From positions 414,841 to 478,840 of the IMG/VR virus record IMGVR_UViG_3300044957_000763: a stretch of DNA of 64,000 nucleotides. One strand, 5' to 3'. The translations under genes and the position numbers were made by a program. Position 1 is the stretch's first letter, and each line of letters begins with the position of its first letter. A model generated the notes under the pieces. It was given only the letters and a program-made list of their open reading frames with translations. It had not been told where the DNA came from and searched no databases. Shown here in pieces: positions 25,450-51,384 of this stretch.

Positions 25450-26652
25450 ATGAGTGAGTTTGCTCGATATCTGGATGCTGAGCTAAATCGCTTTTTGTCA
25501 CGAGAAGCGCAATTTGGTGGTCGAGGAGGCCATCCACAACCATGGATGACAGGTTTTGGTGTTGGCTCGCTTGGTCACGAGCGCCGCACAGGACCCGGCG
25601 GCCAGAATAATTTTGCGCCAAATATGAGTCTTGATAGTATCATGGGTCGAACTCGTCGCAATCTTGATGATGCAGATATTCCAGATATTAATATGGAAAG
25701 GTGGTTAGAAGGCTCACACAGTGACGTTGAGAGCGATAGAAGAGGATATGACCTAAGTCCAGAAGAAAGACAAATGCAGAACACTCGTGAGAAAATGCGT
25801 CGCAGAGAAATGTTCTTGGACTCAGAAAGAAATCCAGAAAAGCCAGTTGATGTTCCAAAGAAATTCAAAGACGGCAGCAATAAAGAACAGCATCAAACAC
25901 TTGAGTCTACGCTTGAGCACAGACATGAAAATGACGGCAAGGAATACAGTGACCAGGCTTCGCCACAAATACAGCCCACACGCACATTTGGTTATGCAAG
26001 CACGTATCAACGTATGCTGAGGCTTGCAACCAAGTCGATATTTGACCAAAACAAAAACTCCCGCGAAGTAAAACGCACACATACCAGTACAGAGGCTACG
26101 CCGGTTATCACATCAAACGAAGAAGCTGACCCAATGAGTGCAGAAGAAGTGTCTAAAAAGATGCCTGCGCTTGGCAAAATGACTACCACATTAAACCCAG
26201 GGGGGATTCCAACATCTAGGTCTGATTTTGAAAGGGCCATAGATGAATTAGCACTAGATGACGCTGGAAAATCAGACTTGGGTATGCATAATGAGGGCAA
26301 TACATGGGGTGAGCGAACTCTGACATTTGACTTGCCGGCGGCAGATGAAGTTGGCGACCATTCTGGTAGCAAGATTCTGCACAAAGACATGCTTGTTGAT
26401 ATGGATAGTGATTTGGATGCATTTCTTTCTAAAGAACCAGATGAATCAGCCACAACACTAGAGGAACAGCTTGAAAAAACGCGGCCGAAACGCAAGTTTA
26501 GATTGCAAGACACAGACCAGGTTGACGGTTTCAGTGAGACAGAAGCAAAGCACTTAACAGACCCCAATTTCCCACATGTTCCTTGGGGATTATCAGACTA
26601 CTACAACGGTGGTGCGTTTGCTGACCATGGCGTACCACTGCCTAAGATATAG
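25450..26652 (+). CDS. Hypothetical head-associated protein
   Basis: 400 aa, acidic and probably disordered; contains SREAQ, TLESTLEHRH and TLEEQLEKTR motifs shared with other head-region ORFs. Confidence 0.55.
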   Translation: MSEFARYLDAELNRFLSREAQFGGRGGHPQPWMTGFGVGSLGHERRTGPGGQNNFAPNMSLDSIMGRTRRNLDDADIPDINMERWLEGSHSDVESDRRGYDLSPEERQMQNTREKMRRREMFLDSERNPEKPVDVPKKFKDGSNKEQHQTLESTLEHRHENDGKEYSDQASPQIQPTRTFGYASTYQRMLRLATKSIFDQNKNSREVKRTHTSTEATPVITSNEEADPMSAEEVSKKMPALGKMTTTLNPGGIPTSRSDFERAIDELALDDAGKSDLGMHNEGNTWGERTLTFDLPAADEVGDHSGSKILHKDMLVDMDSDLDAFLSKEPDESATTLEEQLEKTRPKRKFRLQDTDQVDGFSETEAKHLTDPNFPHVPWGLSDYYNGGAFADHGVPLPKI

Positions 26653-26671
26653 CGTGTATAACCCGCTATAT
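26647..26671 (+). promoter_or_regulatory. TGTATAA in the loop of a hairpin overlapping the glf start codon
   Basis: atatagcg-tgtataacc-cgctatat; the 3' arm includes the AT of ATG 26670. Confidence 0.5.
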
Positions 26672-27797
26672 GGGACTAAAAAAGTACGACTTTCTAATTG
26701 TTGGTGCCGGACTTTTCGGTGCAACATTTGCAAGACACGCAAAAGACAGTGGCAAAAAGGTTCTCGTTATAGACAAGCGAGAACACATTGCCGGTAATTG
26801 TTACGATGAGAAAAAAGAGGAAGTGTATGTCGGATTGTATGGTCCTCATTTTTTACATTGCCCAGATAAAGAAACCTGGGGGTTTGTCAATCGGTTTAGT
26901 GAATTCAATAATGTCCGAGCCAGACCAAAAGTGAACTATCAAGGGCAAATTTACAGTTTCCCAATCAATTTGATGACATTTAGTCAAGTATGGGGTGTCA
27001 CAACACCGGCAGAAGCCAGGGCGAAGATTGAGGAAGAGCGGATTTTAATTGAAAACCCGGCTAATTTTGAGGAGTTTGTGCTTTCTAAAGTGGGTCGGCA
27101 AATCTACGAAATGTTCTTTGAGGGATATACAACAAAGCAATGGGGCAGACATCCGTCAGAACTACCGGCGTCTATTGCGAAAAGAATCCCAATTAGATTC
27201 ACCTATGATGATAACTACTTTCCAGACAGTCATGTCTACCAGGGAATTCCAACACAAGGATATACTAATATGTTCAAAAATATGCTAGACGGAATTGAAG
27301 TTGAACTAGGTGTTGATTATATTTCTAACAGAAAATCATTAAGTAAAATAGCCAAGCAAGTACTGTATACCGGCCCGCTTGATGCTTTGTATCATTACAG
27401 ATACGGCAAACTTGCATATCGCAGTTTAAGATTTGAAACCGAAAGAGTTAACGGTGATTTTCAAGGAAATAGTGTAATCAATTACACAGACATCAATGTT
27501 CCATACACCAGAATCACCGAATGGAAGCACAAATACAATATGGATTGTGAATATTCATATATCACACGTGAGTATCCGGCTTCTTATGAAGAGACCGGTG
27601 AAGCGTACTACCCAATAAATGACAGCGCAAATAATGCACTACACAAAAAATACCAACAACTAGCCGACGCAGACTTGTTGTTGACTGGCGGAAGAAATGC
27701 TGACTATAAGTACTATGATATGAACATGGTTATTCCGGCCGCCAGCCGGCTTGCGGAAAAAGCCATTGGGGTAGGTAAGCGCAGCTTAAGTGTGTAA
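26670..27797 (+). CDS. glf: UDP-galactopyranose mutase
   Basis: LIVGAGLFG FAD motif, HIAGNCYD, YGPHFLH, YTTKQWG, RIPIRFTYDDNYF, YQGIP, YRSLRFE, YTRITEWKH, YYPIND, GRNADYKYYDM. Confidence 0.95.
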   Translation: MGLKKYDFLIVGAGLFGATFARHAKDSGKKVLVIDKREHIAGNCYDEKKEEVYVGLYGPHFLHCPDKETWGFVNRFSEFNNVRARPKVNYQGQIYSFPINLMTFSQVWGVTTPAEARAKIEEERILIENPANFEEFVLSKVGRQIYEMFFEGYTTKQWGRHPSELPASIAKRIPIRFTYDDNYFPDSHVYQGIPTQGYTNMFKNMLDGIEVELGVDYISNRKSLSKIAKQVLYTGPLDALYHYRYGKLAYRSLRFETERVNGDFQGNSVINYTDINVPYTRITEWKHKYNMDCEYSYITREYPASYEETGEAYYPINDSANNALHKKYQQLADADLLLTGGRNADYKYYDMNMVIPAASRLAEKAIGVGKRSLSV

Positions 27798-27800
27798 AGA
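27772..27800 (+). promoter_or_regulatory. Putative phage promoter TAGGTA-N17-TAAAGA
   Basis: Upstream of 27801; predicted +1 falls on the in-frame GTG 27807. Confidence 0.5.
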
Positions 27801-28349
27801 ATGACTGTGAACGCGGAAATCCTGTCACAAATTACCAGACTAGCCAGCGCATATGATGCGCATGGTCAATTAGAGACTGCAGACATTTTAGACGCAGTTC
27901 TAATACGCGTTGCACAGGCCACCGGACCATTCAACATGAATACACCGATGGAAGGTCGTATGCAAAAATATGACCGTTATCACGAAAAAGAGCTTGATGG
28001 TGTTGAACAAGACCGTCAAAAACACCCGAGATTAAGACCCACAGATTATGTCGATGATGGCACTACAGACGAAGACATCGGCAAAGACGAGGTAGTTCCG
28101 ACTGTTCCAAAGCGCAAGAAATTCAAAAAACCTGACAGTGAAACAATTTTTAGCATGGATGATACAGACCCAAAGAAGGGCGGAAACCCGTTCAGAATGC
28201 ACGACAAGGGCACTGCTGGTTGGGGATTCATCACATATGCACCGGATAGTGCGGGTATGTCTGGATTAGACAAATTTACTTGGGAAAACAAGCGTGGAAT
28301 TTATGACAATGCATCTGACAGATATAAACTCTTGTTGCCGCAGACTTAA
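27801..28349 (+). CDS. Hypothetical head-associated protein (N-terminal AxxLDxxG..AD motif)
   Basis: RLASAYDAHGQLETADILDAVL followed by IRVAQ; start may be the in-frame GTG at 27807. Confidence 0.55.
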   Translation: MTVNAEILSQITRLASAYDAHGQLETADILDAVLIRVAQATGPFNMNTPMEGRMQKYDRYHEKELDGVEQDRQKHPRLRPTDYVDDGTTDEDIGKDEVVPTVPKRKKFKKPDSETIFSMDDTDPKKGGNPFRMHDKGTAGWGFITYAPDSAGMSGLDKFTWENKRGIYDNASDRYKLLLPQT

Positions 28350-28371
28350 TGTGGAAACTTTCAAAAAATCG

Positions 28372-28400
28372 TAGGTGTTGTAAACACAAATTCCTAAAGG
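28372..28400 (+). promoter_or_regulatory. Putative phage promoter TAGGTG-N17-TAAAGG
   Basis: Intergenic, upstream of 28430; shares AATCGTAGGTGT with 25408-25419. Confidence 0.65.
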
Positions 28401-28429
28401 CATAGCAACACCTAGCGAGGTAAAACATT

Positions 28430-28951
28430 ATGCCCACACCAATTGGTCTAGTATCACAACAATCATCTTGGGATTACTTGACTCAAGGCCACGACAACTT
28501 TAGTCTTTCTGACATTCAAAAGAACCTGCTTGAAATGAGTGGTGTTCCCATTCGAGAAGCGTCTAAAACTGACCCAAGAATTGTTGTTGCGCTTGAGATG
28601 ATTCTCAAGAATGAATCACAGGATTTGACCGCTCTGGCAGAAGCGGTTGGTAAACCGCGACACGTATATAGCGTGCCGAGCGAAATTAGCGACTATGAAT
28701 TGATTAGCCTCAAGACTGCTGGATTAGTCCAGGGTCATGGTCGCGCAGTCAGTATTACTGACAAAGGCAAAGAAGCCATTCGTATTTATTGGCTTAACTC
28801 AAGCAATAAATACAAGGATTCTAAGTCCGCTGAGTTTGTACATCCATGGAGCAAGCAAGCGTCAAATACTGACGAAAACATTAGGACTGCATCTGTGCGC
28901 CGGCGAAAATTTGCCGATAGCAATTATCGCAAATTCCAAAACGAGGAATAA
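28430..28951 (+). CDS. Hypothetical protein with a winged-helix-like segment
   Basis: ELISLKTAGLVQGHGRAVSITDKGKEAI resembles a wHTH recognition helix plus wing; C-terminal IRTAS and RKFAD. Confidence 0.5.
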   Translation: MPTPIGLVSQQSSWDYLTQGHDNFSLSDIQKNLLEMSGVPIREASKTDPRIVVALEMILKNESQDLTALAEAVGKPRHVYSVPSEISDYELISLKTAGLVQGHGRAVSITDKGKEAIRIYWLNSSNKYKDSKSAEFVHPWSKQASNTDENIRTASVRRRKFADSNYRKFQNEE

Positions 28952-28952
28952 C

Positions 28953-29726: not shown

Positions 29727-29727
29727 C

Positions 29728-32700
29728 GTGAATATTAAGAATCTGCTTGGTAAGTTAAGCATTGGTCGTGCTGGGGTATCCACCAGCACAGGTAACATTG
29801 TGCGCACAGGTGCGCCAGAAGATGCATTTCGTTCTGGTGCTTATGAGTTTATTCGCAAAGCACAAACTGAATCCGTTGAACCCACAAAATCCAATATTGC
29901 CAAAAAGCGCATGACACATCCGGTTGTACTTGTGTCTCGATTCAAATACCCATATGTCAAAACCAAGAAAGTACCAGGCGCTGAAGAGGGCGACAAAGAT
30001 ACCAGAGTTGAAACTGGAGAAATTGGCTGGAAGACGACCGTAAACAAAGATGTTGCAGATGAAGCAGTTAATCAATTGTATGCATATGAATTGTATCTGT
30101 ATCATGACACACAAACTGGTCAAGACCTAATTATTGGACAACCAATTGAAGAATATCTTGCAAAATCACAAGCCAAGAGTCAGCAACCAGCGTTTGACTT
30201 AAATGCACCAAGTACTCCAATGGAAGAGCCTGAGTGGCGCACAGAACAAAAAGCAAAGGCAAAGGCAAAGGCAAAGCGTGCAAATAAAGCAGATATTGAT
30301 GCACTAATGCGAAGATTCTCTGCTGGAGAAGCTGCAGAAATGGATATTCCAACTGGAGATTTTTCACAAGATAGAGAAAATGAGCCAGAAAGATACCAAT
30401 TCAAAGGCAAGATTACAAGGTTTACTACACAGCCCAATGACCCAGAGGGTCAAGCTGCTAAACTGGGTGCCAAAGTCGTGCCAGCTTCTGAATTTGGTTA
30501 TCGCGCATATGAAGTAATGCCAAGTCCGGTCGCGGGCGATTTATACACAGAGCCAAACGGCGAAGATGAATCAAAAATACCAACTTGGACAAAGGGTATT
30601 CATATACCAACTGAAGAGTCTCCGTCCGCATATGGGACAAGTTTCAGATATCGGTTCTCTAATGGCGAACCGGTCCCAACACTTAACGGTGCGAAACACG
30701 TGTTGTCTGAGTTATTAAGTGTTAATGGAGAGAAGGCCGCGAAAGACCCAGGTATGAATGCAGATTTCAATATTTATGAATTCATGACTGCAAACAATCT
30801 TTGGGACCAAATGGATAATTCCGGCCGCTTGCCAGAAGGCACAAAAGCCCAAATTGATAATACCGAAGCACAAATTGAATCAATACCAGAGCTAGAACAC
30901 TTCACGCTTGGCGGCGGCTCGCTGGTAAATCTTGGTGGCAAGAAAGATTCTATTATGTCAGAAGAGAATCTTTTGGCAAGAGCACTGTGGCGATTGACGA
31001 ATCCATCTGTTTTCACTTACATCAACAATGATGGAACCGCTGCATTTAGCCCCAAGAACCCAGATGACAAAAACATTAGTCCATTGGTTGCGCTCGACAA
31101 GCAACTCCATGCTGCGCGTCAGGCGTATGTTGAACTGTTTGATTCACTTAGTCCGGCAGAAAGAAAGGTAAGTCCAGAGCTTATTGAGGCGGCAGACAAG
31201 GCCAACAAACTTGGTATCAAGTTTGTTGACACAATGGCAGCCAAATACCCGTCTAAGTTGCGCGAATTTGTACTTAAACAACCATTTGTGGGTCACGCGC
31301 CCGCTGGTCGATATGGCAAACCTGGTGAAAAAGTAGAGAGCGAATATGCGCTCAGCACTACATCACACTTATCAGACAATGGTCGAACTATTGCTACATA
31401 TGAATCAGGTGGCGGACTTCAAAAACTGAATGACGATGACAGAAAGCTGTATGCTCTTGTCAAGGCATTTGAGCGCAATGCAGACACTGCATTAAACAAT
31501 CAGGCAAGAACGCTCCATAGTCAACATCATGCCAAGTTGGAAGATTTTACATCTAAAGACGATAAATCATACAAAATTCCCACACCAAGGTCGGCTGACG
31601 GAGAGTGGTCTGAACCAGCCGGTAAGTCTATTGACTTTATTGAGCAACACTGGCTTGCAAATCACTTGTTAAGTACGGAAGACAAAAATGCAATTTCAGA
31701 ACTTCGGAAAAGCCTAGCTGCTACAGGTAAGAAATATACCTGGGGACAGGCAGCAATGGCGTATCTCAAAAATCAAGACAGATTAAAAGTAAAGAAATAC
31801 ACACAAGGTGCTGGTATGTTGGGTTCAACAGACCACTTCTTGTCGCAAGGACCTTTTACGTTTGAGATTCCTTCGTCCAATGAAGACGAAGGCGAAAATG
31901 AGCTCATAACACTAAACAGGTTTACACCACAGTCTGAAACCGCAGAAAAACTCAAGCATGAAGTGCTCAAACAGCATTTGTTTAATAAACAAGAAGTAGA
32001 ACTTGCAGAGTATTTGGCCGGTAGAGTGCCGTTTGAAAATGAAGACGATGCGCTATTTTCAATTTGGGCCAACTGGTTAATAAAGGCCAAACGCACTGAG
32101 TCAGCCAATAGGGCTGAAAAAGCTCTTGCCGCTCAAGAAGCCAAAGAAAAGTCTAAATCAGAAAATGCCAGGGGTAAACCAAGTGGCTGGCCTTATGCTT
32201 TGACATCTCAAAAATTTAGCGATGAAGAGCGCGAACAATTTGCTGGCAATCTAGAAGATTTTGTCAATACGATTAAAAACCAAGCCGGTGCGGTAATAGA
32301 CCACCATCGAAAAATGGTCTATATCAACCCAGATGGTTCTCAAGTTGAGTTGCCAAGTGCCTTGCCAGTGCAACTACCGGAAGGCGCAAGAGTTCCAATG
32401 CCAGTAAGTATGCTGAAGAGAATCAAGGACGATGATGTATTGGCACAATATGGTTTTGTGAGAATTAAAAACGCTCTATACAGTGCTGTAAACAGCCAGC
32501 CTGTAACAATGCAAGATGGCGTATTGGCTATTGGCGATGAATTGGTTCCTGTTGAATCACTGAACAATATGACGCCTAGCGACATTGTCAAAAACTACAA
32601 TATTTTCATGCGAGATGGTAAGTACTATCACGTATCTGAAAAAAATAGGGTGAGCAGTCCTGTTGTAGAGGTTATTGCACGCGGTGGTGAAAAAATTTCA

Positions 32701-37634: not shown

Positions 37635-37659
37635 GCATCCGTGGAGGATACATAGAAAA

Positions 37660-38907: not shown

Positions 38908-38927
38908 CCTTTAACTCCACGATGCTA

Positions 38928-38959: not shown

Positions 38960-38986
38960 ACCAAACCAGACAGGCAGTAAAACAAA

Positions 38987-39202: not shown

Positions 39203-39214
39203 GAGGACAGAACA

Positions 39215-40084
39215 ATGAGAAGAGCATTCCAAAAAGTATCGGAGCAAAATCAAGCACCTGATTATGTGTTGAAGCGTTTTGCTGCCACTGAAGACAATCT
39301 TGAAGTAGACCCATATGAGGGCCTGCGACAACGTGCTGCCGAGAACCAACAAAGAATTGCACATGATGAATTGGTGTACGGTCGACCTGAAGCACCAAAG
39401 CCGGCGCGAGAGTGGGAACAGGAAAGAATTGCAGACACTTATCGACCACGACAAATGAGCCGGACTGCAGACAGTTTTGAGCCAGAAGACCTTAGTAGAC
39501 GTTCTGTGAGGCGTGTTGAAACCGCAGAATCACACAATACTGGCTATCGCCCAATGGAAAGCTATAATAGCGGCGGCAACGAACTTTACGTTACACGAAT
39601 GGACGCTGAACGAATGCTATACAATGGCGAGTCGTTCTTTGACCCACAGTTGGCAGAAATCACGTCAACAATTGCAGAACGAGACATGCGAAGGAAAGCA
39701 GAACAGGCAATGCGCGACAAGCAGTCATTGGTTGGAAGCAAATGGGAAAGCCAGGCATCTGGTCGCGCTAAACGCGAGCACAAGCGTGTACTCGACAGGT
39801 GGAGCAATTTCGACGCAGTAAATGGCGGATTTACTCGAGTGGCCAACGAACGAGAGACCGCGAGCCGATTTGGCATGACAGACCCAACTGCAGCATTACA
39901 GCGAGATATGCTTCGGCAAGAGGCTGTTCAAGAGCGAATGCAAAGAAAGGCGGCAATCAAGGGAATTGACCATGAAACACCGGCACAACGAAATTCATGG
40001 GAAGACGAAGTACAACTGATGGCAGGCACAGTGCAACAAGACCACTCAATGTCTTGGATTAGTGACTTCTTCAAAGGTAAGTAA
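39215..40084 (+). CDS. Hypothetical head-associated protein
   Basis: 289 aa, Arg/Glu-rich; GAGG RBS; LKRFAA motif. Confidence 0.6.
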   Translation: MRRAFQKVSEQNQAPDYVLKRFAATEDNLEVDPYEGLRQRAAENQQRIAHDELVYGRPEAPKPAREWEQERIADTYRPRQMSRTADSFEPEDLSRRSVRRVETAESHNTGYRPMESYNSGGNELYVTRMDAERMLYNGESFFDPQLAEITSTIAERDMRRKAEQAMRDKQSLVGSKWESQASGRAKREHKRVLDRWSNFDAVNGGFTRVANERETASRFGMTDPTAALQRDMLRQEAVQERMQRKAAIKGIDHETPAQRNSWEDEVQLMAGTVQQDHSMSWISDFFKGK

Positions 40085-40086
40085 GA

Positions 40087-41025: not shown

Positions 41026-41027
41026 TC

Positions 41028-42179: not shown

Positions 42180-42185
42180 GTAGCA

Positions 42186-42518
42186 GTGTGGTACAAATTC
42201 GCCAACCAATACGGTGAACCAACGCCATTTATTCCAGAACCAACTCGTGAATTGGGTTCTAATGAGCAAGAGGCCTTGGCTGACGACACACCTGCATTAG
42301 ATAAGCGAATCAAAGAGTTAGCAAATCCAAAGAAAGACCCATACCAGCAAACAATTGAAGGTCAGCTTACTTCTTTGCATCACGAGAATAAAAACATGCT
42401 AGACCCTAACGGAGAGGAGCCAGATGCCTTGTGGCGTGGTTGGGGGATTAAGGCGCAAAGTGATGCAACATCGCCAGATAAGAACTGGCCAGCGGCTTTG
42501 AGCAAGGTACAAGTTTAA
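42186..42518 (+). CDS. Small hypothetical head-associated protein
   Basis: AAGGAG RBS, GTG start; N-terminal WYKFAN; TIEGQLTSLH. Confidence 0.55.
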   Translation: MWYKFANQYGEPTPFIPEPTRELGSNEQEALADDTPALDKRIKELANPKKDPYQQTIEGQLTSLHHENKNMLDPNGEEPDALWRGWGIKAQSDATSPDKNWPAALSKVQV

Positions 42519-45069: not shown

Positions 45070-48000
45070 ATGTTACGAAAGGGTATATCAGGAAACCTAA
45101 TTGGGCGCAATCAAATAGAGTTCATTGACCCGGCCGAAGCTCGGCGGGTCATCATTGCTGCCAAAAATGGCAAACAAAGCCTATATGCAGACCCAGCAGA
45201 TGTGCTCAATCGAGACGTTGAAGGCGATTTTGATTTATTGAAAGAAATGAATGACCGCCAGGGATACAATCTCTTGTGGGTCAGATGTCGTGCTATTGAC
45301 GCTGATACGATTAATGCCAATGGTGATTATTTCTCAGCAGAAGAGCTTCTTAAAGAAGTCATTCACCATGGAAAAAAGGTTCCGGCTTATAAAACCTTTG
45401 AAGGTTGTCCAATCCACACTAATCACGATAACAAAGACATCACCAAGGCTAAAGGCGAGGTCGTATATGCAGAGTGGGATGATAAAAACCAGTGCGTGTG
45501 GTGCACGTTCTATATATCAGAAGACGCATACCCAGAAATTGCCAATGGTATTCGCATTGGTATGATGAGCGATGTCTCAATGGGATGTACTGTTGAGAGC
45601 GGCTTGTGTTCTGTTTGTGGAAAAGAGGCCGTTCGTGTTGATGACTACTGCGAACACCTTAAAAAATACAAAGGCAAGAAATTGCCTGGTGCGAACAGTA
45701 AGGTGTATGAAAAAAACAAGGGTATCAAGTTCATTGAACTGTCTCTGGTTAATGATGGTGCATTTGACAGTTGTGCAATTAGCGAACTCTATGACCAAGA
45801 CGAACTAACTCAAAAAGCACTTGAATTCAACCGAAGAGTTGCTGAGATTCGAAATCATGTTTTGACAGCGGGTCACCTTACTGCTGAAATGACGCCTTCT
45901 GTGCGCAATGCATATGAGGGCATGCTAAGAACTGTTGTGAGCACAACCACAACTGCTGTTAGAGTGGCGCAGACCCAAGTAGACAATCCACAGTTACTTG
46001 CAACTAATGGTGCAAATGCCAATTCTACCGTTGCTGGAATTTTGAAGGCACTTGGAATGGACGCAAGACAACAACTTAACGTGCTTGACTTGCTAAATGT
46101 TGCGCTTAACTTCCTTGAAGTCGCAATTATGCAGATGTTCACTCGCAAAGATAATGTTGATTTACAACACGTATCAAAGATTGCCAAAGCTATGTCTGAC
46201 CTTCAAGGAACCATGCAAGACTTAATTGACGATGGTGTTGATTCACCAGTAGGTGCCATTGCCGGTACTGGTGGTGCTGCAGGAACATTGCTAAATCCAG
46301 GCGGCGGACAAACAGGACAAACCTCTGTAGCACAGGCACCAGGCCAAGCACAAGCACCCGTACAACCATATAATCCGGCAGAAGGCGGAGTCGGACAAAT
46401 GATGTCACCTGTTCAAGTAAGTGAAAGGTCATTTACTACTGAAAAACCACTCAACCCATTATTAGGCGAAAGCAATAGACGCCAATTGGTATGGGCAAAC
46501 AAAGATAGTTCAGAGGAGCGAGAAGTATACGCATCGCGCAAATCTAGAGCCAATAACATAGAACGATTTGGTCAAAGCCTATTAGCTTTGGCTGAAAGCG
46601 TTGGGGCTGGCCCACTGGCGGCACCAATGTCTACACGTGCCGCTAATAACGAGCAACCAGTGAGAAGTACTAAAACAGTGCAAAATAACGGAGACACAAC
46701 CAAGATGAAAAACCCATTCCAGAGAATCGCAAGTAAATTGCGTGAAAGGAAGCCACTCGAGGTCTCATTCTCAGCAGAGGCTCACAGTCCTGATACAAAC
46801 CACAGAATTGTAGTTTCAACGAAAGGAGACATCGAAGGCTACTATATGAACCGGCTTGCCAATTGGCAACCGCAACTCAACGACCACCTTATTAGTGCAA
46901 TCGAGCAAGAGAACCTTGATTATGCGCTTCCTGTTTTAATGGAAGACTTTCAAAATCATGTTCGAAACGCACAGACTAAAAACATTGACATTTGGTCAGA
47001 TATTGACCTTGAACCAGAGGGTGAAAAGGATGTCAAGGAAAATGCACTTGAGGGTGAACGACACCCGGTAAAGGGCGATGGTGAAATCATTGACAGCTAT
47101 GTCAAGACAAAGCGAACAAACCCTGCTGGTGACACAACCATAGAGGACGAACTTGAAGCCAAAAGAACAGGCACGGATTCTAAGGCTAAAGAAGAGTTGC
47201 TCGAAAATGCTGGTCTGTATGCACGTCGAGATAATGGTCAGGAAGTACATGACTTCCTGGTTGACGATGCACGTTGTGGATGCCCTGACGAACATATTGA
47301 AGAGAGGCTCAAGGGTCGACACGGTCGCAATGACAAGGTGGAAACACGCAAACTTGCAAGCAATATCGCCACCGAACTCGGCCGCGCTGCTTATGCTGCT
47401 CGTGTGACACCAGAAGAGATTATCGAAGTCTCTACAAAAATTGCACAACGAGAAGACCTTGAGGAACTTATCGCTCTGGCATCTCTGGGTACAGATACCA
47501 GAGAGCGAACTGCACAAAGACACGCTTTCTTTAACAACTCATCTGTAATGTTGGGTGCTGAAAATGCTATCTATCACGGTCTTGGCAAAATCGTCAGCGA
47601 TGACATTAAAGCCGGTGACGTTGTAGACGGTCTTCGTGCTGTAATTAGCGAGCGAGAACTTGCTGGAAAATTGATTACTCGAATTGCAAAAACAATGGTT
47701 GAGAATGCACCAACAACTTATGCTGATGTTGTGGTTAAAGCATCTCGCGAAGAACAACTGCGAACTGCTTTGAATTCTCTTGCAGATGGCGAGACTGAAA
47801 CCAGTCGGGGTCATCTCAAGGCTGTGCTTTGCGCTCTAGCAGGAGCTGCAGATGAGTGCCAAGCCGCGCCTGAAGAGGTTATCAATGTAATTGCATCACG
47901 CAATTCTGGTGAAATCTTCGAAACACTCGGCATGTACAACAGCGCAAGTGCACGAGAGGCCAGAAATACTCTTAGACAAAGAGAAGAGTTCTATGGCAAG

Positions 48001-49302
48001 CGAATGGCATCTAAGAAAGATGTCGAGCACACCGTGTTCGGCTGGATGTCAGATTTTGTCCACGATGGTCAAATCGACAGCTACGCGCTTGCCGAAGCGG
48101 CAAGCCTTCTCGGAGCTCGACCTGTTGCTGCGACTAATTTACTTGGTCGACTGCTCGAACGCCAGGCGGCAATTTCGGTTACAGATGAAAAGTGCACAAC
48201 CAAGAGACTGACAGCAACTGTTAGTGACTTTGAAGACCTAGACCCCAAGTCAAATGACTTCGACCAACAGTTTAGAATGCGTGCAATGGACATCTTCCGA
48301 CAAGCTGGTTACGATGTTGACGATGGCACATTCAACCTAACTAGTTTGAGTGTTGACCAGTCTGGAAACATTCAAGCTGAAGTCTCCGCACGACTCACCA
48401 AGACATTCTGTGTCGAAGGAAGTAAAGTTGGCGCGGGCATGGATGCGGTAAACGAACTTCCAGTTGAAGCCACACTTGCAGAAAACACACCAATGGAAGA
48501 TGAATCTGGAAATCTCTACACTGTTTCGGCCATGGATGTGCTTGGAATGGAGCGAACTGCTCAAGCCGCACCAGGAATGGGTGGCGGAATGGGAATGGGA
48601 ATGCCGCCGGCTGCACCAGCGGGTGGTGGTGTTGACCCGTTGGCCGGGGCTACCGACCCAATGGGCGGAGGCTTTGCTTCAATGACAGTACCTAGTGAAT
48701 CAGGGGCGCCAGGAACTGAACCAGTTACCGACACTGTAAACGCAGACGATATGTCAGAACCGGGCACAAAACAACCATGGGGGACAGTGTGTCCTGTCTG
48801 TGGTTCAAAGGACGTTAGCATTGCTAACGGCGAAGGTGAGTGCCAGAGCTGTGGTACACAATTGAAATTCAAGCTGATGGTCGAGGCCGCTCCGAGCACC
48901 GATGATGCTGGCGGCGGAGACGAGGGTGCCGATGCTGGAGTGGATGACATGGGTGCAATGCCTGGTGGTGACATGGGCGCTGCACCAGCCATGCCTGCGG
49001 CTGGGGCACCAACAGACCCAATGATGATGCAAGCAAGTTGGACAAGTTCGCCGCTGGTATGGCAACGATTTGCTGCGGCTGGTCAAGGCGTTTCTGAAAA
49101 AGAAGCAACCAAAGCCAGACAAGCAATGAAACAATTACCAGTCGGACATGTTTGCCCTGGCTGTGGCGACCGTGAACAAATCGAGAAGATTCGAAATAAG
49201 ACTATTTGTACTGCTTGCGGTACGGTGGCTGTTTCCAAGGTTGCGGCAGTAGAAGGACAGCCTAATCTGTTGTCCAATACCATCTACTGGATACTCGAAT
49301 AA
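45070..49302 (+). CDS. Prohead (capsid maturation) protease with a ~1150-aa C-terminal extension
   Basis: N-terminal NANGDYF..EEL, HTNHD (His), VSMGC (Ser), FIELSLV HK97/assemblin-type pattern; C-terminal CPVCG..CQSCG and CPGCG..CTACG zinc ribbons; ATG 45070 with GGAG at 45061. Confidence 0.75.
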   Translation: MLRKGISGNLIGRNQIEFIDPAEARRVIIAAKNGKQSLYADPADVLNRDVEGDFDLLKEMNDRQGYNLLWVRCRAIDADTINANGDYFSAEELLKEVIHHGKKVPAYKTFEGCPIHTNHDNKDITKAKGEVVYAEWDDKNQCVWCTFYISEDAYPEIANGIRIGMMSDVSMGCTVESGLCSVCGKEAVRVDDYCEHLKKYKGKKLPGANSKVYEKNKGIKFIELSLVNDGAFDSCAISELYDQDELTQKALEFNRRVAEIRNHVLTAGHLTAEMTPSVRNAYEGMLRTVVSTTTTAVRVAQTQVDNPQLLATNGANANSTVAGILKALGMDARQQLNVLDLLNVALNFLEVAIMQMFTRKDNVDLQHVSKIAKAMSDLQGTMQDLIDDGVDSPVGAIAGTGGAAGTLLNPGGGQTGQTSVAQAPGQAQAPVQPYNPAEGGVGQMMSPVQVSERSFTTEKPLNPLLGESNRRQLVWANKDSSEEREVYASRKSRANNIERFGQSLLALAESVGAGPLAAPMSTRAANNEQPVRSTKTVQNNGDTTKMKNPFQRIASKLRERKPLEVSFSAEAHSPDTNHRIVVSTKGDIEGYYMNRLANWQPQLNDHLISAIEQENLDYALPVLMEDFQNHVRNAQTKNIDIWSDIDLEPEGEKDVKENALEGERHPVKGDGEIIDSYVKTKRTNPAGDTTIEDELEAKRTGTDSKAKEELLENAGLYARRDNGQEVHDFLVDDARCGCPDEHIEERLKGRHGRNDKVETRKLASNIATELGRAAYAARVTPEEIIEVSTKIAQREDLEELIALASLGTDTRERTAQRHAFFNNSSVMLGAENAIYHGLGKIVSDDIKAGDVVDGLRAVISERELAGKLITRIAKTMVENAPTTYADVVVKASREEQLRTALNSLADGETETSRGHLKAVLCALAGAADECQAAPEEVINVIASRNSGEIFETLGMYNSASAREARNTLRQREEFYGKRMASKKDVEHTVFGWMSDFVHDGQIDSYALAEAASLLGARPVAATNLLGRLLERQAAISVTDEKCTTKRLTATVSDFEDLDPKSNDFDQQFRMRAMDIFRQAGYDVDDGTFNLTSLSVDQSGNIQAEVSARLTKTFCVEGSKVGAGMDAVNELPVEATLAENTPMEDESGNLYTVSAMDVLGMERTAQAAPGMGGGMGMGMPPAAPAGGGVDPLAGATDPMGGGFASMTVPSESGAPGTEPVTDTVNADDMSEPGTKQPWGTVCPVCGSKDVSIANGEGECQSCGTQLKFKLMVEAAPSTDDAGGGDEGADAGVDDMGAMPGGDMGAAPAMPAAGAPTDPMMMQASWTSSPLVWQRFAAAGQGVSEKEATKARQAMKQLPVGHVCPGCGDREQIEKIRNKTICTACGTVAVSKVAAVEGQPNLLSNTIYWILE

Positions 49303-49304
49303 GG

Positions 49305-49395: not shown

Positions 49396-49403
49396 CATAA
49401 GAA
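49375..49403 (+). promoter_or_regulatory. Putative phage promoter TAGGTG-N17-TAAGAA
   Basis: Overlaps the third terminator hairpin; upstream of the scaffold-decoration-capsid operon. Confidence 0.65.
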
Positions 49404-49473
49404 GCCAGATAGACGAAGTGTTGGCAAAAGCCGATACCCCACCCAAATCATAAATTAGGGAGCAAATCTGACT

Positions 49474-51384
49474 ATGGCTACAACAAAACAAGAAGGAGGA
49501 CTGGACGCACGCACCAAAGCGGTTCGCTTGGCAATGCTACAGGAATCCGACGCGGACGATTTTCGACAATGCGTTCGTGAAGTGCAAGCCAGCACAGGAC
49601 TTTCCGCAGCGGAAGCTCGGATTGTTGCTGGAGCACTTAGAAGTGAAATGCTTCCCAAAGTTGCTGAATCTCTCGGACTAGAGGAGGATGACATTGCAGA
49701 TTTTGCAAACAAACTTCCAGACGAAGAAGATGATGTAGACGGGGAGCAACCGACCACAGATTTCGCTGACGACAAGGTTGAAGACGAAGATGACTTCGTT
49801 GAAGAACCACAAGATGATACAGCCGCCATTCGAGGGGATGCTCTCGATATGGGTGGTGAAGACGCCATCGAAGACGACATGAGCGATGAAGACGACTTGG
49901 GTACAGAACAGACCCTTGAGATTCAGGTGCCTACGGGCAAGGTAGACGAGATTCAAGAAGCGATTCGTTCGATTCTTGGAGACGATGCTTTTGGCCTTGG
50001 CGGAGATTCTGAATTCAATTTCGAAGATGACGAAGAGGGAGATTTTGGAGATGAAAATTTCGAAGATAAACCTTGGGGAGACGACGACGATTTGAATTTA
50101 GAAGATGAAAACATTGGGGAAGAAGCCCCGAACATAGGAAAACAGGTGATTAGCATGTCCAACAAGCAAAAGGCTGGCCGTGAAGTCAGGGCTGCTGATG
50201 AGCAGGTGAAACCAAAAGACCGAGGTCTTGGAAGTGACACTAGCCACGGAGGCAAACCTTTCCAATATGCGGCAGATGCCCAATATCAGGGTGAAGACAC
50301 ACGACCTGGCATGACTCTTGAGGACAGTGCCGGCAATTCACTCCGCGACCAAAACCCGACTTTCGCAGATGCGACAGTCCCCGCCAAAAACCCCGAGAGA
50401 CTTCAGTTGAAGAATTCGTACAAAACCTTCACATACGAAGGTGCCGATGGTGACATCGAGTACGACATGAGCAGCGAAGTTTTCGAAGTCCCCTCTGCTG
50501 GCGAAAAAGCCGGCGGCGAATTTGAAGTTCCGACTCAAATGACCAGTACTCTTGACCGCAAGACTACTGTGGCCACTTTGAACAGTAACGTCGAAAGAGT
50601 AGCTGGGGAAAAAGCAACCGACGACAGTGATTATGTCACTGCAAACAACGAAGAGCTTTATGTTACTTCTGACAATCGCACCGTAGGTCGCGATGAATTC
50701 GAAGAGCATGTCATTGACACCTTGGTGGCAAGTGGCATGACTGAGAAAGAAGTACTTGCAATGTCATTCGCAGAAGGGCTCGAGCTATACGGCAATATTG
50801 TCGAACAGCGCACTGCTGCAAGCAATGCAATGGGAGAAATTACCCGCGCACATGCCGAAAGGCAGGCTCGTATCAACAAACTGGCAGCCGACCTTACGGT
50901 CGAGATTACTGGTGGAACTGAAGAGCCAGATGGTACAGAAGAGACACTTGAGGAAGCCCTTAAGGAATCTCGAGAGGCCATGAGAGACACATTCATCCGC
51001 GAGGCTGAATTGTTCAAAAAGCGCGTTAAAGCCGCTTATGGCGTAACTACTCGACTCGTAATCGCTGGAATTATCAACGATAACGAGGTCGACAATCACG
51101 TAGACACTTGGCTCAAGGACAACCTGAGCGTGGGTGCCATGCTTAAGCAAGGCAACTTCATGCTGAGGGCTGCGTCCAAGACGACCGACCGAACCGTACA
51201 AAGTGGCAACAGTGGCAACACTCGAACTGCTGGAGTATCGGTAAACCCTGCCCTTGTAACACCGAATCTCGGTAGCACACAGGAGGTTAAGGACCGTCTC
51301 GCCAATCTTTTCACTGTTGGTGGTATCCCACGTAATGCATTTGATGCTTACAAAGATAACGACAACAACAGCAGGGACTTTTAA
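49474..51384 (+). CDS. Putative capsid scaffold protein
   Basis: 636 aa, very acidic, coiled-coil C-terminal third; between the protease and the decoration/capsid genes. Confidence 0.6.
   Translation: MATTKQEGGLDARTKAVRLAMLQESDADDFRQCVREVQASTGLSAAEARIVAGALRSEMLPKVAESLGLEEDDIADFANKLPDEEDDVDGEQPTTDFADDKVEDEDDFVEEPQDDTAAIRGDALDMGGEDAIEDDMSDEDDLGTEQTLEIQVPTGKVDEIQEAIRSILGDDAFGLGGDSEFNFEDDEEGDFGDENFEDKPWGDDDDLNLEDENIGEEAPNIGKQVISMSNKQKAGREVRAADEQVKPKDRGLGSDTSHGGKPFQYAADAQYQGEDTRPGMTLEDSAGNSLRDQNPTFADATVPAKNPERLQLKNSYKTFTYEGADGDIEYDMSSEVFEVPSAGEKAGGEFEVPTQMTSTLDRKTTVATLNSNVERVAGEKATDDSDYVTANNEELYVTSDNRTVGRDEFEEHVIDTLVASGMTEKEVLAMSFAEGLELYGNIVEQRTAASNAMGEITRAHAERQARINKLAADLTVEITGGTEEPDGTEETLEEALKESREAMRDTFIREAELFKKRVKAAYGVTTRLVIAGIINDNEVDNHVDTWLKDNLSVGAMLKQGNFMLRAASKTTDRTVQSGNSGNTRTAGVSVNPALVTPNLGSTQEVKDRLANLFTVGGIPRNAFDAYKDNDNNSRDF

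What the first reader, a model, noticed from the sequence alone, without database searches (positions are those of the whole stretch)
25450..51384. Shared R/K-x-A|(Q/A/S) motif across about a dozen unrelated head proteins: candidate new prohead-protease cleavage code
Seen: the motif recurs, often after hydrophobic or aromatic residues and at low-complexity/domain borders: LSREAQ (25450), LIRVAQ (27801), NIRTAS and RRKFAD (28430), FIRKAQ (29728), DTRLAQ and MIREAK (37660), LKRFAA (39215), YVKAQ (40087), WYKFAN (42186), WVREAR (portal), AVRVAQ, HVRNAQ, LERQAA, MERTAQ, WQRFAA (protease), EVRAAD, EQRTAA, MLRAAS, NTRTAG (scaffold). Established: T4 gp21 and phiKZ gp175 cleave many internal head proteins at short consensus sites ending in Glu. 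Inference: the protease at 45070 cleaves after Ala with a basic P3 residue, a specificity I do not know from any characterised phage, and processes itself, the scaffold, the portal tail and the cargo. The 286-aa capsid protein has no such N-terminal site.
Basis: partly seen in the sequence, partly recalled or inferred. Interest (0 to 1): 0.85.

Follow-up and report, generated by a model that had tools for sequence, protein, structure and literature searches.

The report
Megaphage head-protease cleavage motif candidate
A three-residue pattern (Arg/Lys, any residue, Ala) is strongly and specifically over-represented in the head-assembly proteins of this ~480-kb phage and its relatives, including cultured phage G; it most likely marks where the head-maturation protease cuts, which would be a new, herpesvirus-like specificity that no experiment has yet tested.

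Summary
An unbiased scan of every gapped residue pair puts R-x-A far ahead of all others in the head module (105 seen, 48 expected, p about 1e-12). RA, RxxA, AxR and KxA sit at expectation, and replication and tail genes show no excess. The signal is in the protein, not the DNA.

It recurs in relatives that are only 25-50% identical, at aligned positions and with R/K swaps:
- just after the protease domain;
- near the scaffold C-terminus;
- in the portal tail;
- at the N-termini of several cargo families.

It also holds across 107 diverse protease-fusion proteins (KxA z = 25.6) and in cultured phage G (KxA 53 against 26). The same scan on T4 recovers its known I/L-x-E code.

The protease domain models onto the T4 gp21 (assemblin-type) fold, with invariant His and Ser.

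The best reading is a prohead-protease code, hydrophobic-[R/K]-x-Ala, cut before Ser/Gln/Ala, acting on a 1,410-aa protease-led polyprotein, the scaffold, the portal tail and cargo leaders. This is inferred only: no cleavage data exist, and neither the scissile bond nor the enzyme is shown. I found no prior report. I rate it a new variant of a known kind, directly testable in phage G.

The parts
45070..45969 (+). Prohead serine protease domain (aa 1-300 of the 1,410-aa fusion protein), with invariant His119, Ser170 (VSMG) and Glu214 and a four-Cys insert.
   Evidence: PHROG head maturation protease, 3.5e-20. AF2 pLDDT 90.4. Foldseek to T4 gp21 5JBL: probability 1.0, TM 0.58. Phage G gp19 at 2.7e-20 plus COG3740 proteases. 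Invariant columns in A3. The ATG at 45070 is supported by homologous N-termini.
45970..49302 (+). C-terminal 1,110-aa extension of the protease, a putative polyprotein: helical domains, two zinc ribbons and long low-confidence linkers.
   Evidence: RxA 19 against 8.2 over the whole fusion. AF2 on A4 gives alternating confident domains and segments with pLDDT below 50. The family consists of 1,100-2,600-aa fusions.
45961..45969 (+). RVA|Q, aa 298-300: candidate release site after the protease domain.
   Evidence: [RK]xA in 20 of 20 non-redundant homologues and Ala in 33 of 33. It lies in a segment with pLDDT below 50.
46636..46644 (+). RAA|N, aa 523-525: candidate internal site.
   Evidence: R in 24 of 33 and A in 23 of 33 (VIR[SILV]A in relatives). 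Inside a low-pLDDT segment.
46723..46731 (+). RIA|S, aa 552-554: candidate internal site.
   Evidence: [RK]-[IVL]-A-[SQ] in 16 of 20. At the edge of a low-pLDDT segment.
46963..46971 (+). RNA|Q, aa 632-634: candidate internal site.
   Evidence: Ala in 32 of 33 and [RK]xA in 17 of 20. At the end of a helix, 12 aa before a disordered segment.
48001..48009 (+). RMA|S, aa 978-980: candidate internal site.
   Evidence: Ala in 32 of 33 and [RK]xA|S in 19 of 20. In an inter-helix loop of the model.
48160..48168 (+). RQA|A, aa 1031-1033: candidate internal site.
   Evidence: [RK]-T/Q-A in 13 of 20. At the junction between a helical domain and a low-pLDDT segment.
48553..48561 (+). RTA|Q, aa 1162-1164: candidate internal site.
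   Evidence: [RK]xAQ in 20 of 20 and Ala in 33 of 33. In the long disordered Gly/Pro/Met-rich linker. Highest flank score in the fusion, 4.0.
49066..49074 (+). RFA|A, aa 1333-1335: candidate C-proximal site.
   Evidence: [RK]xA in 17 of 20 and Ala in 30 of 33. Predicted helical, so the structural context does not favour it.
49474..51384 (+). Very acidic 636-aa protein between the protease and the capsid genes: putative scaffold.
   Evidence: Assigned by position and composition only; no family hit. RxA 11 against 3.3.
49525..49533 (+). RLA|M, aa 18-20 of the scaffold.
   Evidence: [RK]-[LI]-A in 18 of 22 homologues.
50188..50196 (+). RAA|D, aa 239-241 of the scaffold.
   Evidence: An RxA lies within +-8 residues in 33 of 33. 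Relatives read [RK]-[ILF]-A-[SAQ]-EEE.
51166..51174 (+). RAA|S, aa 565-567 of the scaffold: candidate maturation site about 70 aa from the C-terminus.
   Evidence: L-[RK]-[SA]-A-[QS], with Ala in 31 of 33. Best flank score in the window, 4.4.
51223..51231 (+). RTA|G, aa 584-586 of the scaffold: second C-proximal site.
   Evidence: R in 29 of 33 and Ala in 31 of 33. Relatives carry a third site between the two.
42540..44939 (+). Portal protein with a variable N-terminal extension, a Gly/Pro-rich linker and a C-terminal DUF559/Vsr-like nuclease domain.
   Evidence: PHROG portal, 2e-37. Pfam Portal_Mu, DUF559 and REase_MTES_1575.
44259..44267 (+). REA|V, aa 574-576: candidate site that would detach the portal C-terminal tail.
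   Evidence: Y-[RK]-x-A-S in 13 of 13 non-redundant homologues and Ala in 25 of 25.
42657..42710 (+). RSA (aa 40-42) and RYA (aa 55-57) in the divergent portal N-terminal extension.
   Evidence: Relatives keep one or two [RK]xA sites here in otherwise unalignable sequence. An RxA lies within +-8 residues of aa 55 in 18 of 25.
25501..25509 (+). REA|QFGG, aa 18-20 of the 400-aa protein at 25450: candidate leader cleavage site.
   Evidence: 20 of 22 distinct homologous N-termini read M-x(2-10)-[RK]-[TIL]-A-(Q/AG/N)-FGGVGG. The two exceptions have Ser or Gly in place of Ala.
27837..27914 (+). RLA|S (aa 13-15) and RVA|Q (aa 36-38) flanking a 30-aa hairpin motif in the 182-aa protein at 27801.
   Evidence: Both positions carry [RK]xA in most of the relatives inspected (L103, L118, L128, L141); L115 has lost the second site. 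The motif recurs at 28953 aa 216 and 29728 aa 2474.
28553..28561 (+). REA|S, aa 42-44 of the 173-aa protein at 28430.
   Evidence: [RK]-[EKT]-A follows the conserved LSDIQIQLLG block in 5 of 8 relatives inspected.
29854..29862 (+). RKA|Q, aa 43-45 of the 2,502-aa protein.
   Evidence: Flank score 2.7. No homologue is available to test conservation. Over its whole length the protein is not enriched (11 against 10.8).
37762..37836 (+). RKA|A (aa 35-37) and RLA|Q (aa 57-59) after the conserved MADRIF... leader of the 415-aa protein at 37660.
   Evidence: 35 of 37 distinct homologous N-termini have [RK]-[LFYV]-A at aa 31-37, followed by divergent acidic sequence.
39275..39283 (+). RFA|A, aa 21-23 of the 289-aa protein at 39215.
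   Evidence: Kept in the two closest relatives. It is replaced by K-F-V-G-A in most others, which instead keep K-[ET]-A near aa 55.
20923..20931 (+).
   Evidence: This protein has the highest RxA excess of all, 9 against 1.8. Flank score 3.4.
52256..52264 (+). RVA|L, aa 28-30 of the major capsid protein. It is conserved, and whether it is cut is unknown.
   Evidence: E-G-[RK]-x-A-L-A-Q is invariant from this phage to phage G, with Lys in L036 and L037.

Best explanation
[Arg/Lys]-x-Ala is the recognition code of this phage's head-maturation protease. The fuller consensus is (Met/Leu)-(Ile/Val/Leu)-[Arg/Lys]-(Thr/Leu/Val/Ile)-Ala followed by Ser/Gln/Ala. The protease is the N-terminal 300 aa of the 1,410-aa protein at 45070-49302.

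Proposed mechanism:
- The protease is built into the prohead as part of a polyprotein.
- It frees itself at RVA|Q (aa 300) and dices its own C-terminal extension at about seven further conserved sites.
- It trims or degrades the acidic scaffold, including two sites 50-70 aa from its C-terminus.
- It detaches the portal's C-terminal tail at aa 576.
- It removes short N-terminal leaders from several internal ('cargo') proteins.

Shown: the enrichment, its specificity to head genes, its conservation at aligned positions across relatives and across the whole protease-fusion family, and the protease fold with its catalytic residues.

Inferred: that the motif is cleaved, that the scissile bond follows Ala (by analogy with the P3-x-P1 codes of T4 and phiKZ and the Ala|Ser bond of herpesvirus assemblin), and that this protease is the enzyme.
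For: 1. Unbiased scan. RxA is the top gapped dipeptide in head proteins (105 against 48.3, z = 8.2, p = 1e-12). RA, RxxA, AxR and KxA are at expectation, and early and late genes show no excess.

2. Protein-level signal. Codons at the sites are as varied as elsewhere in these genes.

3. Close-clade relatives. Their protease fusions are 35-41% identical and their scaffolds 24-35%. Upstream of the capsid gene [RK]xA is 1512 against 892, the control [RK]xxA is 840 against 891, and downstream [RK]xA is 297 against 278.

4. Conserved sites. There are 32 [RK]xA sites conserved in at least 60% of non-redundant homologues, against 9-15 for [RK]A, [RK]xxA and [RK]xxxA. R and K interchange at these sites. 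Ala is kept in 33 of 33 at protease sites 300 and 1164 and in 25 of 25 at portal 576.

5. Cargo leaders. 20 of 22 N-termini of the 25450 family read ...[RK]xA-QFGGVGG, and 35 of 37 of the 37660 family have [RK]xA at aa 31-37. In the window, RxA[QSA] lies within the first 60 aa in 8 of 18 head proteins against 1 of 26 others (p = 0.0017).

6. Whole family. Over 107 cluster representatives of protease fusions (excluding the window's own), KxA is 2361 against 1403 (z = 25.6, second only to CxxC) and RxA is 941 against 582. Ser is 2.8-fold and Gln 1.9-fold enriched at the next position. A flank-only matrix learned from those proteins picks out head sites in the window: 3.74 per 1000 aa against 0.91 and 0.62.

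7. Flanking sites. The protease domain has an [RK]xA on its N-terminal side in 44 of 47 family members and on its C-terminal side in 42 of 47.

8. Phage G. In gp4-gp21 KxA is 53 against 26.0; in its other genes it is 18 against 17.7.

9. Positive control. The same scan on T4 gp67, gp68, gp21 and gp22 returns IxE and LxE as the top two patterns, which is T4's established code (code as described in PMC5694885).

10. The enzyme. The AF2 model (pLDDT 90.4) matches T4 gp21 (probability 1.0) and phage prohead proteases, and His119, Ser170 and Glu214 are invariant.
Against: - No proteomic or biochemical data exist for this phage or, as far as I could find, for phage G.
- The scissile bond cannot be read from sequence. 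At conserved sites Ala (85% kept) is no more invariant than the basic residue (89%).
- Sites are not preferentially in disordered or indel-rich regions. Only 5 of 17 RxA in the polyprotein touch segments with pLDDT below 50, which make up 37% of residues, and flanks of conserved sites are about as conserved as average.
- Several conserved sites are predicted helical (aa 873, 900, 1335).
- The 2,502-aa protein has RxA at the chance rate, so context must decide which sites count.
- A distant cultured relative, mycobacteriophage Rizal, gives only a weak and unspecific signal.
- Only 64 kb of a 479-kb genome was visible, so a second protease cannot be excluded.
Confidence: 0.6

Rival explanations
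1. The motif is recognised by the same protease, but the cut falls after the basic residue (P1 = Arg/Lys, with Ala at P2') or at another nearby bond.
For: The basic residue is kept as often as Ala at conserved sites (89% against 85%). From my own knowledge, not checked here, the HK97-type protease matures its capsid protein at a Lys|Ser bond.
Against: Enriched positions run from five residues before Ala to one residue after it. That fits a P5-P1' footprint with P1 = Ala, as in herpesvirus assemblin, and the P3-x-P1 format of T4 and phiKZ. Replacements of Ala are mostly Ser, Val and Thr, and in the 25450 family Ser or Gly, as expected for a small S1 pocket. The Ala-Ser dipeptide is itself enriched 1.53-fold.
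Confidence: 0.13
2. The motif is cleaved, but by a different enzyme: another phage-encoded protease (for example an M16 zinc peptidase such as phage G gp2, or ClpP) or a host protease.
For: Phage G encodes an M16 peptidase (HxxEH) next to its terminase, and also ClpP. From my own knowledge, M16 mitochondrial processing peptidases favour Arg at P2 or P3. Only 64 kb of the 479-kb genome could be inspected.
Against: No M16 homologue or HxxEH motif occurs in the window or in close-clade loci; it is found only in the phage-G-like loci L155 and L156. The enrichment follows the protease-fusion family itself, inside its own polypeptide and flanking its own domain, across 107 diverse members.
Confidence: 0.1
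3. The motif is a binding or capsid-targeting element, for example docking onto the scaffold, portal or shell, and is not cleaved.
For: Many sites are N-terminal, like capsid-targeting sequences. Three copies of a 30-aa hairpin motif begin with [RK]xA. Several conserved sites are predicted helical. The capsid protein's own R-V-A lies in a strongly conserved block.
Against: Targeting alone does not explain 19 copies inside one polyprotein, tandem clusters of two or three sites in Ser/Ala-rich stretches (scaffold C-terminus, protease N-flank), or sites bracketing the protease domain. In T4, targeting leaders and cleavage sites coincide (PMC5694885), so this reading would add to cleavage rather than replace it.
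Confidence: 0.12
4. The pattern is chance or a by-product of composition or secondary structure in Arg/Ala-rich helical proteins.
For: The proteins are rich in charged residues and Ala, and many sites lie in predicted helices.
Against: Per-protein shuffles never reach the observed count (0 of 2000). The neighbouring patterns RA, RxxA, AxR and KxA are flat. The signal repeats in independent relatives and in 107 family representatives at z = 25.6. Flank preferences learned elsewhere transfer to the window.
Confidence: 0.02

Closest known systems
T4 gp21 prohead protease and its (Leu/Ile)-x-Glu| code
   Same: Same fold (Foldseek probability 1.0). Same P3-x-P1 format. Many head proteins are processed, N-terminal leaders are removed from internal proteins, and the scaffold is degraded. 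The code is detectable by the same enrichment scan.
   Different: P1 would be Ala rather than Glu, and P3 basic rather than aliphatic. Here the protease is fused to 1,100 further residues. Sequence similarity is undetectable by Pfam or PDB searches.
phiKZ gp175 / SPN3US gp245 giant-phage proteases ((Ser/Ala/Gly)-x-Glu|)
   Same: A giant phage with many internal head proteins. Propeptides carry several motif copies, and the protease cuts itself (PMC5694885 and PMC10052503).
   Different: A different code (no Glu at P1). A different, phage-G-like lineage with a small 286-aa capsid protein. The protease is an N-terminal domain of a polyprotein rather than a 260-aa protein trimmed at its C-terminus.
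Herpesvirus assemblin (pUL26) with release and maturation sites
   Same: The protease is at the N-terminus of a long assembly polypeptide, with one site releasing the protease and one near the scaffold C-terminus (architecture from PMC4498786). The inferred scissile bond Ala|Ser matches the (Val/Leu/Ile)-x-Ala|Ser consensus, which I give from my own knowledge and did not check here. Same fold superfamily, as stated in PMC5694885.
   Different: P3 is basic here and hydrophobic in herpesviruses. The third catalytic residue is probably Glu, not His. There are many more sites. The scaffold is a separate gene and shares no C-terminus with the protease protein.
HK97-type prohead proteases (Peptidase_S78, COG3740, XkdF, DUF2213)
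   Same: Structure search finds these as the next-best viral matches. The gene lies between portal and capsid genes.
   Different: No Pfam model reaches threshold; 1 of 47 family members hits S78 at E = 0.003. A four-Cys insert is present. A separate scaffold takes the place of a capsid delta domain.
Bacillus phage G gp19 (annotated head maturation protease)
   Same: Closest cultured homologue (29% identity, BFVD E = 2.7e-20). Its head module shows the same excess in the Lys form (KxA 53 against 26), and sites flank its protease core (GLVKTA|AKVVKIA|PKEDD).
   Different: gp19 is a free-standing 300-aa protein. Phage G's small head proteins carry a distinct N-terminal (K/S)RL(I/V)KK tag. No cleavage data were found.

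Membership tests
Prohead (capsid-maturation) serine proteases of the assemblin / T4 gp21 / HK97 fold superfamily | Assemblin-like protease fold | tested here: met
   AF2 model with pLDDT 90.4 and pTM 0.82. T4 gp21 (5JBL) is the only PDB match with a low rmsd (3.5 A, TM 0.58, probability 1.0). 137 BFVD matches at E <= 1e-3, including annotated prohead proteases.
Prohead (capsid-maturation) serine proteases of the assemblin / T4 gp21 / HK97 fold superfamily | Conserved catalytic His and Ser, in that order, plus a third residue | tested here: met
   His119, Ser170 (V-S-M-G) and Glu214 are invariant in 47 sequences with a mean column identity of 34%. Taking Glu214 as the third member is inferred from its order and invariance, not from geometry.
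Prohead (capsid-maturation) serine proteases of the assemblin / T4 gp21 / HK97 fold superfamily | Match to a curated family model (Peptidase_S78, S78_2 and the like) | tested here: not met
   No Pfam hit for the window protein. Among 47 family members there is one hit each to S78 and S78_2 and two to DUF2213, all at E of about 0.003 and below the cut-off. A PDB profile search found nothing.
Prohead (capsid-maturation) serine proteases of the assemblin / T4 gp21 / HK97 fold superfamily | Gene placed between portal and scaffold/capsid genes | tested here: met
   The order portal 42540, protease 45070, acidic protein 49474, 51401, capsid 52175 is syntenic in all close relatives.
Prohead (capsid-maturation) serine proteases of the assemblin / T4 gp21 / HK97 fold superfamily | Demonstrated cleavage of head proteins | not testable with these tools
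   Needs proteomics or biochemistry.
Glu-specific giant-phage/T4 cleavage code (x-x-Glu|) | Glu at P1, visible as an enriched [LIASG]-x-E pattern in head proteins | tested here: not met
   No x-Glu pattern is among the twelve most enriched pairs listed for the head set, whose scores run down to z = 2.8; the top is RxA at z = 8.2. The same scan does find IxE and LxE in T4.
Herpesvirus assemblin-type processing (release and maturation sites, Ala|Ser) | Protease fused upstream of an assembly polypeptide, with a conserved site just after the protease domain | tested here: met
   Site 298-300 is conserved in 20 of 20 non-redundant homologues (33 of 33 for Ala). A C-flank site is present in 42 of 47 family members.
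Herpesvirus assemblin-type processing (release and maturation sites, Ala|Ser) | Site near the scaffold C-terminus | tested here: met
   Scaffold sites 565-567 and 584-586 lie 50-70 aa from the end, with Ala in 31 of 33 at each. Whether they are cut was not tested.
Herpesvirus assemblin-type processing (release and maturation sites, Ala|Ser) | Small P1 (Ala) with Ser at P1' | tested here: inconclusive
   Ala is the fixed residue, and Ser is 2.8-fold enriched after it across 3,248 family sites. The position of the scissile bond is inferred.
Herpesvirus assemblin-type processing (release and maturation sites, Ala|Ser) | Hydrophobic P3 (Val/Leu/Ile) and a Ser-His-His triad | tested here: not met
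   P3 is Arg/Lys. The third invariant residue is Glu214, not His.
M16 (pitrilysin / mitochondrial-processing-peptidase-like) leader removal | An HxxEH zinc peptidase encoded with the head genes | tested here: not met
   tblastn of phage G gp2 and a search for the HxxEH motif on the + strand, where all the head genes lie, find nothing in the window or close-clade loci. The other 415 kb of the genome could not be searched.

The most novel reading that the evidence does not exclude
A whole, largely uncultured lineage shares a prohead-protease code [Lys/Arg]-x-Ala| followed by Ser/Gln. The lineage comprises phage-G-like megaphages and kin, more than 2,500 sequence clusters of this protease, most of the best-matching clusters being 1,100-2,600-aa fusions. 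These phages would deliver much of their internal head content as a protease-led polyprotein that dices itself inside the prohead. That is herpesvirus-style Ala|Ser chemistry and release/maturation-site logic operating in bacteriophages.
Probability: 0.5. Interest if true: 0.7.

Novelty: new variant of a known kind. Interest (0 to 1): 0.6.

Why it matters
Processing of many head proteins at a short consensus by the prohead protease is established for T4 and for phiKZ-like phages, and all characterised cases of that type cut after Glu. A basic-P3, Ala-P1 code would be a third specificity class.

What it would allow:
- prediction of mature protein boundaries, and so of the real internal or ejected proteins, for hundreds of huge-phage genomes known only from metagenomes;
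- an explanation for why their proteases come as giant fusions, namely as polyproteins;
- a closer functional link between phage and herpesvirus capsid maturation, through the Ala|Ser bond and the release and maturation sites.

Cultured phage G carries the same signal, so the idea can be tested at once, possibly by re-searching existing virion mass-spectrometry data.

Tried and rejected
- **DNA-level motif.** Rejected: Arg and Ala codons at the sites mirror overall usage.
- **Local composition or helix periodicity.** Rejected: RA, RxxA, AxR and KxA are flat.
- **Sites in indel-rich, poorly conserved linkers.** Not supported: flanks of conserved sites are about as conserved and as gap-free as random positions. 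The test is biased towards regions that align well.
- **Sites in AF2 low-confidence segments.** Mixed: 5 of 10 conserved sites, including the two invariant ones, lie in or beside such segments, but overall RxA is not enriched there (5 of 17 against 37% of residues).
- **Which residue is P1.** Comparing the invariance of Ala and of the basic residue did not decide it.
- **Sequence searches for the protease family.** Pfam, a PDB profile search and nucleotide search of the phage collection gave nothing usable.
- **Terminase as an anchor for relatives.** Only the contig itself was found. The cargo genes near the terminase were reached through portal-anchored loci instead.
- **Literature.** The phage G capsid paper (Gonzalez 2020) is not held. 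The 2025 phage G multi-omics paper used a trypsin-specific search and reports no cleavage sites. The phage G tail paper and the P1 paper gave nothing relevant. No paper linking megaphages to a prohead-protease code turned up.
- **Mycobacteriophage Rizal as a cultured test case.** The signal is weak and not specific: RxxA and AxR are also raised.
- **M16 peptidase as the enzyme.** It is absent from the window and from close relatives.

Full report
**What the window is.** The window is the last 64 kb of a 478,840-bp IMG/VR contig. Its nearest cultured relative is Bacillus phage G: the portal is 28% identical and the capsid protein 49%.

Profile searches identify four head genes:
- the large terminase, 22290-25409;
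- the portal, 42540-44939;
- a 1,410-aa protein whose first ~260 residues match head-maturation proteases, 45070-49302;
- a 286-aa major capsid protein, 52175-53035.

Between protease and capsid lie a very acidic 636-aa protein with no family hit, which I take as the scaffold on position and composition alone, and a 249-aa protein. The stretch 25450-42518 holds proteins without recognisable families. The exceptions are a UDP-galactopyranose mutase and a DUF192 protein.

[RK]xA[QAS] occurs 44 times in the head ORFs against 20.5 expected from composition-preserving shuffles of each protein, and none of 2000 shuffles reaches 44. Replication genes give 13 against 10.4, and capsid/tail genes 3 against 4.4.

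To avoid testing a pattern chosen after the fact, I scored all 400 residue pairs at gaps of 0 to 4. R-x-A is the top pattern in the head set by a wide margin: 105 against 48.3, z = 8.2, Poisson p = 1e-12. The next pattern reaches z = 4.4. RA (45), RxxA (48), AxR (62) and KxA (52 against 56) are ordinary, and RxA is at expectation in the other two gene sets. So this is not a side effect of Arg/Ala-rich stretches.

Arg and Ala codons at the sites are as varied as elsewhere, so the signal is in the protein. The excess is spread over at least seven proteins:

| Protein | RxA seen | Expected |
|---|---|---|
| 20812 | 9 | 1.8 |
| 28953 | 7 | 1.4 |
| 37660 | 11 | 3.6 |
| 39215 | 9 | 3.5 |
| portal | 8 | 3.1 |
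| protease fusion | 19 | 8.2 |
| scaffold | 11 | 3.3 |

In this genome the Lys form is not enriched.

**Relatives.** Anchoring on the capsid and portal proteins brought in about 160 loci. In the close clade the capsid protein is 70-78% identical, but the protease fusion is only 35-41% identical, the scaffold 24-35% and the portal 42-49%.

| Region | [RK]xA seen | Expected |
|---|---|---|
| Close clade, upstream of capsid gene | 1512 | 892 |
| Same, control [RK]xxA | 840 | 891 |
| Close clade, downstream | 297 | 278 |
| Phage-G-like loci, upstream | 762 | 563 |

At the level of single sites, 32 alignment columns carry [RK]xA in at least 60% of non-redundant homologues. The neighbouring patterns give 9-15 such columns. 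Arg and Lys interchange freely at these sites.

The best-conserved sites in the window's proteins are these:
- protease fusion aa 298-300 (Ala 33 of 33), then 523, 552, 632, 978, 1031, 1162 (Ala 33 of 33) and 1333;
- scaffold aa 18, 239, 565 and 584, the last two being 50-70 residues from the C-terminus, with a third site between them in relatives;
- portal aa 574-576 (Ala 25 of 25), which lies between a Gly/Pro-rich linker and the C-terminal nuclease-like domain.

**Cargo leaders.**
- The 25450 family reads M-x(2-10)-[RK]-[TIL]-A-(Q/AG/N)-FGGVGG in 20 of 22 distinct N-termini. The two exceptions have Ser or Gly in place of Ala. The window's copy has a longer, 17-residue leader before the same REA|QFGG junction.
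- The 37660 family has a conserved MADRIFPN... leader ending in [RK]-[LFYV]-A at aa 31-37 in 35 of 37, followed by unalignable acidic sequence.
- The 27801 and 28430 families keep their sites in most relatives.

Not everything holds. The 28953 site reads H-E-L-A-Q in relatives. The 39215 site is kept only in the two closest relatives. The 42186 family keeps A-[QS]-(F)GGG better than it keeps the basic residue. The 40087 family has no site.

Within the window, RxA[QSA] falls in the first 60 residues of 8 of 18 head proteins against 1 of 26 others (p = 0.0017).

**The whole protease family.** An exhaustive profile-free search with the protease domain finds 2,522 cluster representatives. Most of the 150 best matches listed are 1,100-2,600-aa proteins with the protease at the N-terminus.

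Over 107 of them (excluding the window's own cluster), KxA is 2361 against 1403 (z = 25.6) and RxA is 941 against 582 (z = 14.9). Among all gapped pairs, KxA is second only to the CxxC of their zinc ribbons. KA, KxxA, AxK, RA and AxR stay at 0.92-1.05 of expectation, and RxxA at 1.21. Ser (2.8-fold) and Gln (1.9-fold) are favoured after the Ala, and Met/Leu and Ile/Val/Leu at the two residues before the basic one.

A scoring matrix built only from those flanks, and so independent of the window, finds 3.74 good sites per 1000 residues in the window's head proteins, against 0.91 in early genes and 0.62 in late genes. The protease domain itself is bracketed by a site on its N side in 44 of 47 family members and on its C side in 42 of 47.

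Cultured phage G shows the same feature in the Lys form. KxA is 53 against 26.0 in gp4-gp21, and 18 against 17.7 in its other genes. Sites lie near the N-termini of gp9, gp13, gp20, gp21 and the portal, and on both sides of the gp19 protease core.

**Does such an excess mean cleavage?** As a positive control I ran the identical scan on T4 gp67, gp68, gp21 and gp22. The two top patterns are IxE (15 against 5.9) and LxE (16 against 7.0). That is the code T4 gp21 is known to use, cutting C-terminal to Glu as described in PMC5694885. So the method recovers a known prohead-protease code from sequence alone.

**The enzyme.** The enzyme fits the role:
- The AF2 model of aa 1-300 is confident (pLDDT 90.4).
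- Its only geometrically sound PDB match is T4 gp21 (probability 1.0, rmsd 3.5 A).
- Among viral models it matches phage G gp19 and then annotated prohead proteases of the HK97, XkdF and DUF2213 kinds.
- No curated sequence model reaches threshold, so this is a distant branch of the superfamily.

**Weak points.**
- Nothing shows that a bond is cut.
- Placing the cut after Ala rests on analogy: the P3-x-P1 codes of T4 and phiKZ, the Ala|Ser bond of herpesvirus assemblin (my own knowledge), the footprint of enriched positions, and small-residue replacements of Ala. Ala is not more invariant than the basic residue (85% against 89%).
- The structural context is mixed. In the AF2 model of aa 290-1410, five of ten conserved sites, including both invariant ones, lie in or beside segments with pLDDT below 50. 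Others sit in helices, and RxA overall is not enriched in disordered parts.
- An alignment-based linker test was negative.
- The 2,502-aa protein carries RxA at the chance rate, so flanks or accessibility must matter.
- A second protease cannot be excluded. Phage G has an M16 zinc peptidase beside its terminase. No homologue occurs in the window or close-clade loci, but 415 kb of this genome was not visible.

**Comparison with known systems.** The system works like the T4 and phiKZ/SPN3US systems: one protease, a short code, many substrates, leader removal and self-cleavage. The difference is the code.

Its layout most resembles herpesvirus pUL26. There the protease sits at the N-terminus of an assembly polypeptide, with a release site after the protease and a maturation site near the scaffold C-terminus (PMC4498786). 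It differs from that system in its basic P3, in a probable Glu as third catalytic residue, and in having many more sites.

I found no description of this specificity or of phage G processing sites in the held literature. The key phage G capsid paper is not held.

**Verdict.** It is a new variant of a known kind, of solid interest to people who work on phage assembly, and can be tested at once in phage G.

Noticed in passing
window 44700-44906 (portal aa 721-789): The portal carries a C-terminal DUF559 / REase_MTES_1575 (Vsr-like endonuclease) domain after a Gly/Pro-rich linker. It is conserved in relatives and lies downstream of the conserved Y-[RK]-x-A-S site, so it could be released inside the head.
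   Followed up: partly
window 27837-27914; 29598-29690 (28953 protein from aa 216); 37147-37233 (29728 protein aa 2474-2502): [quoted passage not shown] It may be a shared docking module.
   Followed up: partly
window 26670-27797: A UDP-galactopyranose mutase (Pfam GLF, 1.6e-68) sits inside the head module and is syntenic in relatives (L115, L128, L141). It has no RxA excess.
   Followed up: no
window 29728-37236: The 2,502-aa protein has no family hit, and the 900-residue C-terminal part tested found no homologue in relatives, which carry 550-820-aa proteins at the same position.
   Followed up: partly
window 52256-52264 (capsid aa 28-30): The capsid protein has an invariant E-G-[RK]-x-A-L-A-Q block right after a variable N-terminus. 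It is conserved through to phage G, with Lys in L036 and L037. Whether about 30 N-terminal residues are removed is open.
   Followed up: partly
L002 (phage G) gp5, gp9, gp10, gp13, gp17, gp20, gp38; L057 small ORFs: Many small head-module proteins of the phage-G-like clade begin with a shared tag, M(K/S)RL(I/V)(K/R)K..., often running straight into K-x-A. It looks like a common N-terminal targeting-plus-cleavage leader.
   Followed up: partly
L002:1980-3212 (phage G gp2); L155:960-2174: An M16-type zinc peptidase (HFIEH) is encoded next to the terminase in phage-G-like phages but is absent from the window and the close clade.
   Followed up: yes
L163:13992-18104 (mycobacteriophage Rizal gp94): The gene annotated 'tape measure' in the record is a 1,370-aa protease fusion of this family, lying between the portal and capsid genes. 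209 Mycobacterium phage records match the protease domain.
   Followed up: partly
window 55969-58407, 58407-60860, 60860-63274: Three tandem paralogues of about 810 aa share the block TGTGTTW..DRLAVGSRIGFGST. They are probably fibre or receptor-binding proteins.
   Followed up: no
window 22290-25409: The large terminase is 1,039 aa, but only aa ~190-640 match terminase models. It has long unexplained N- and C-terminal extensions.
   Followed up: no
window 48700-49300 (fusion aa ~1240-1390): [quoted passage not shown] CxxC is the most enriched pair across the whole family (678 against 41).
   Followed up: no
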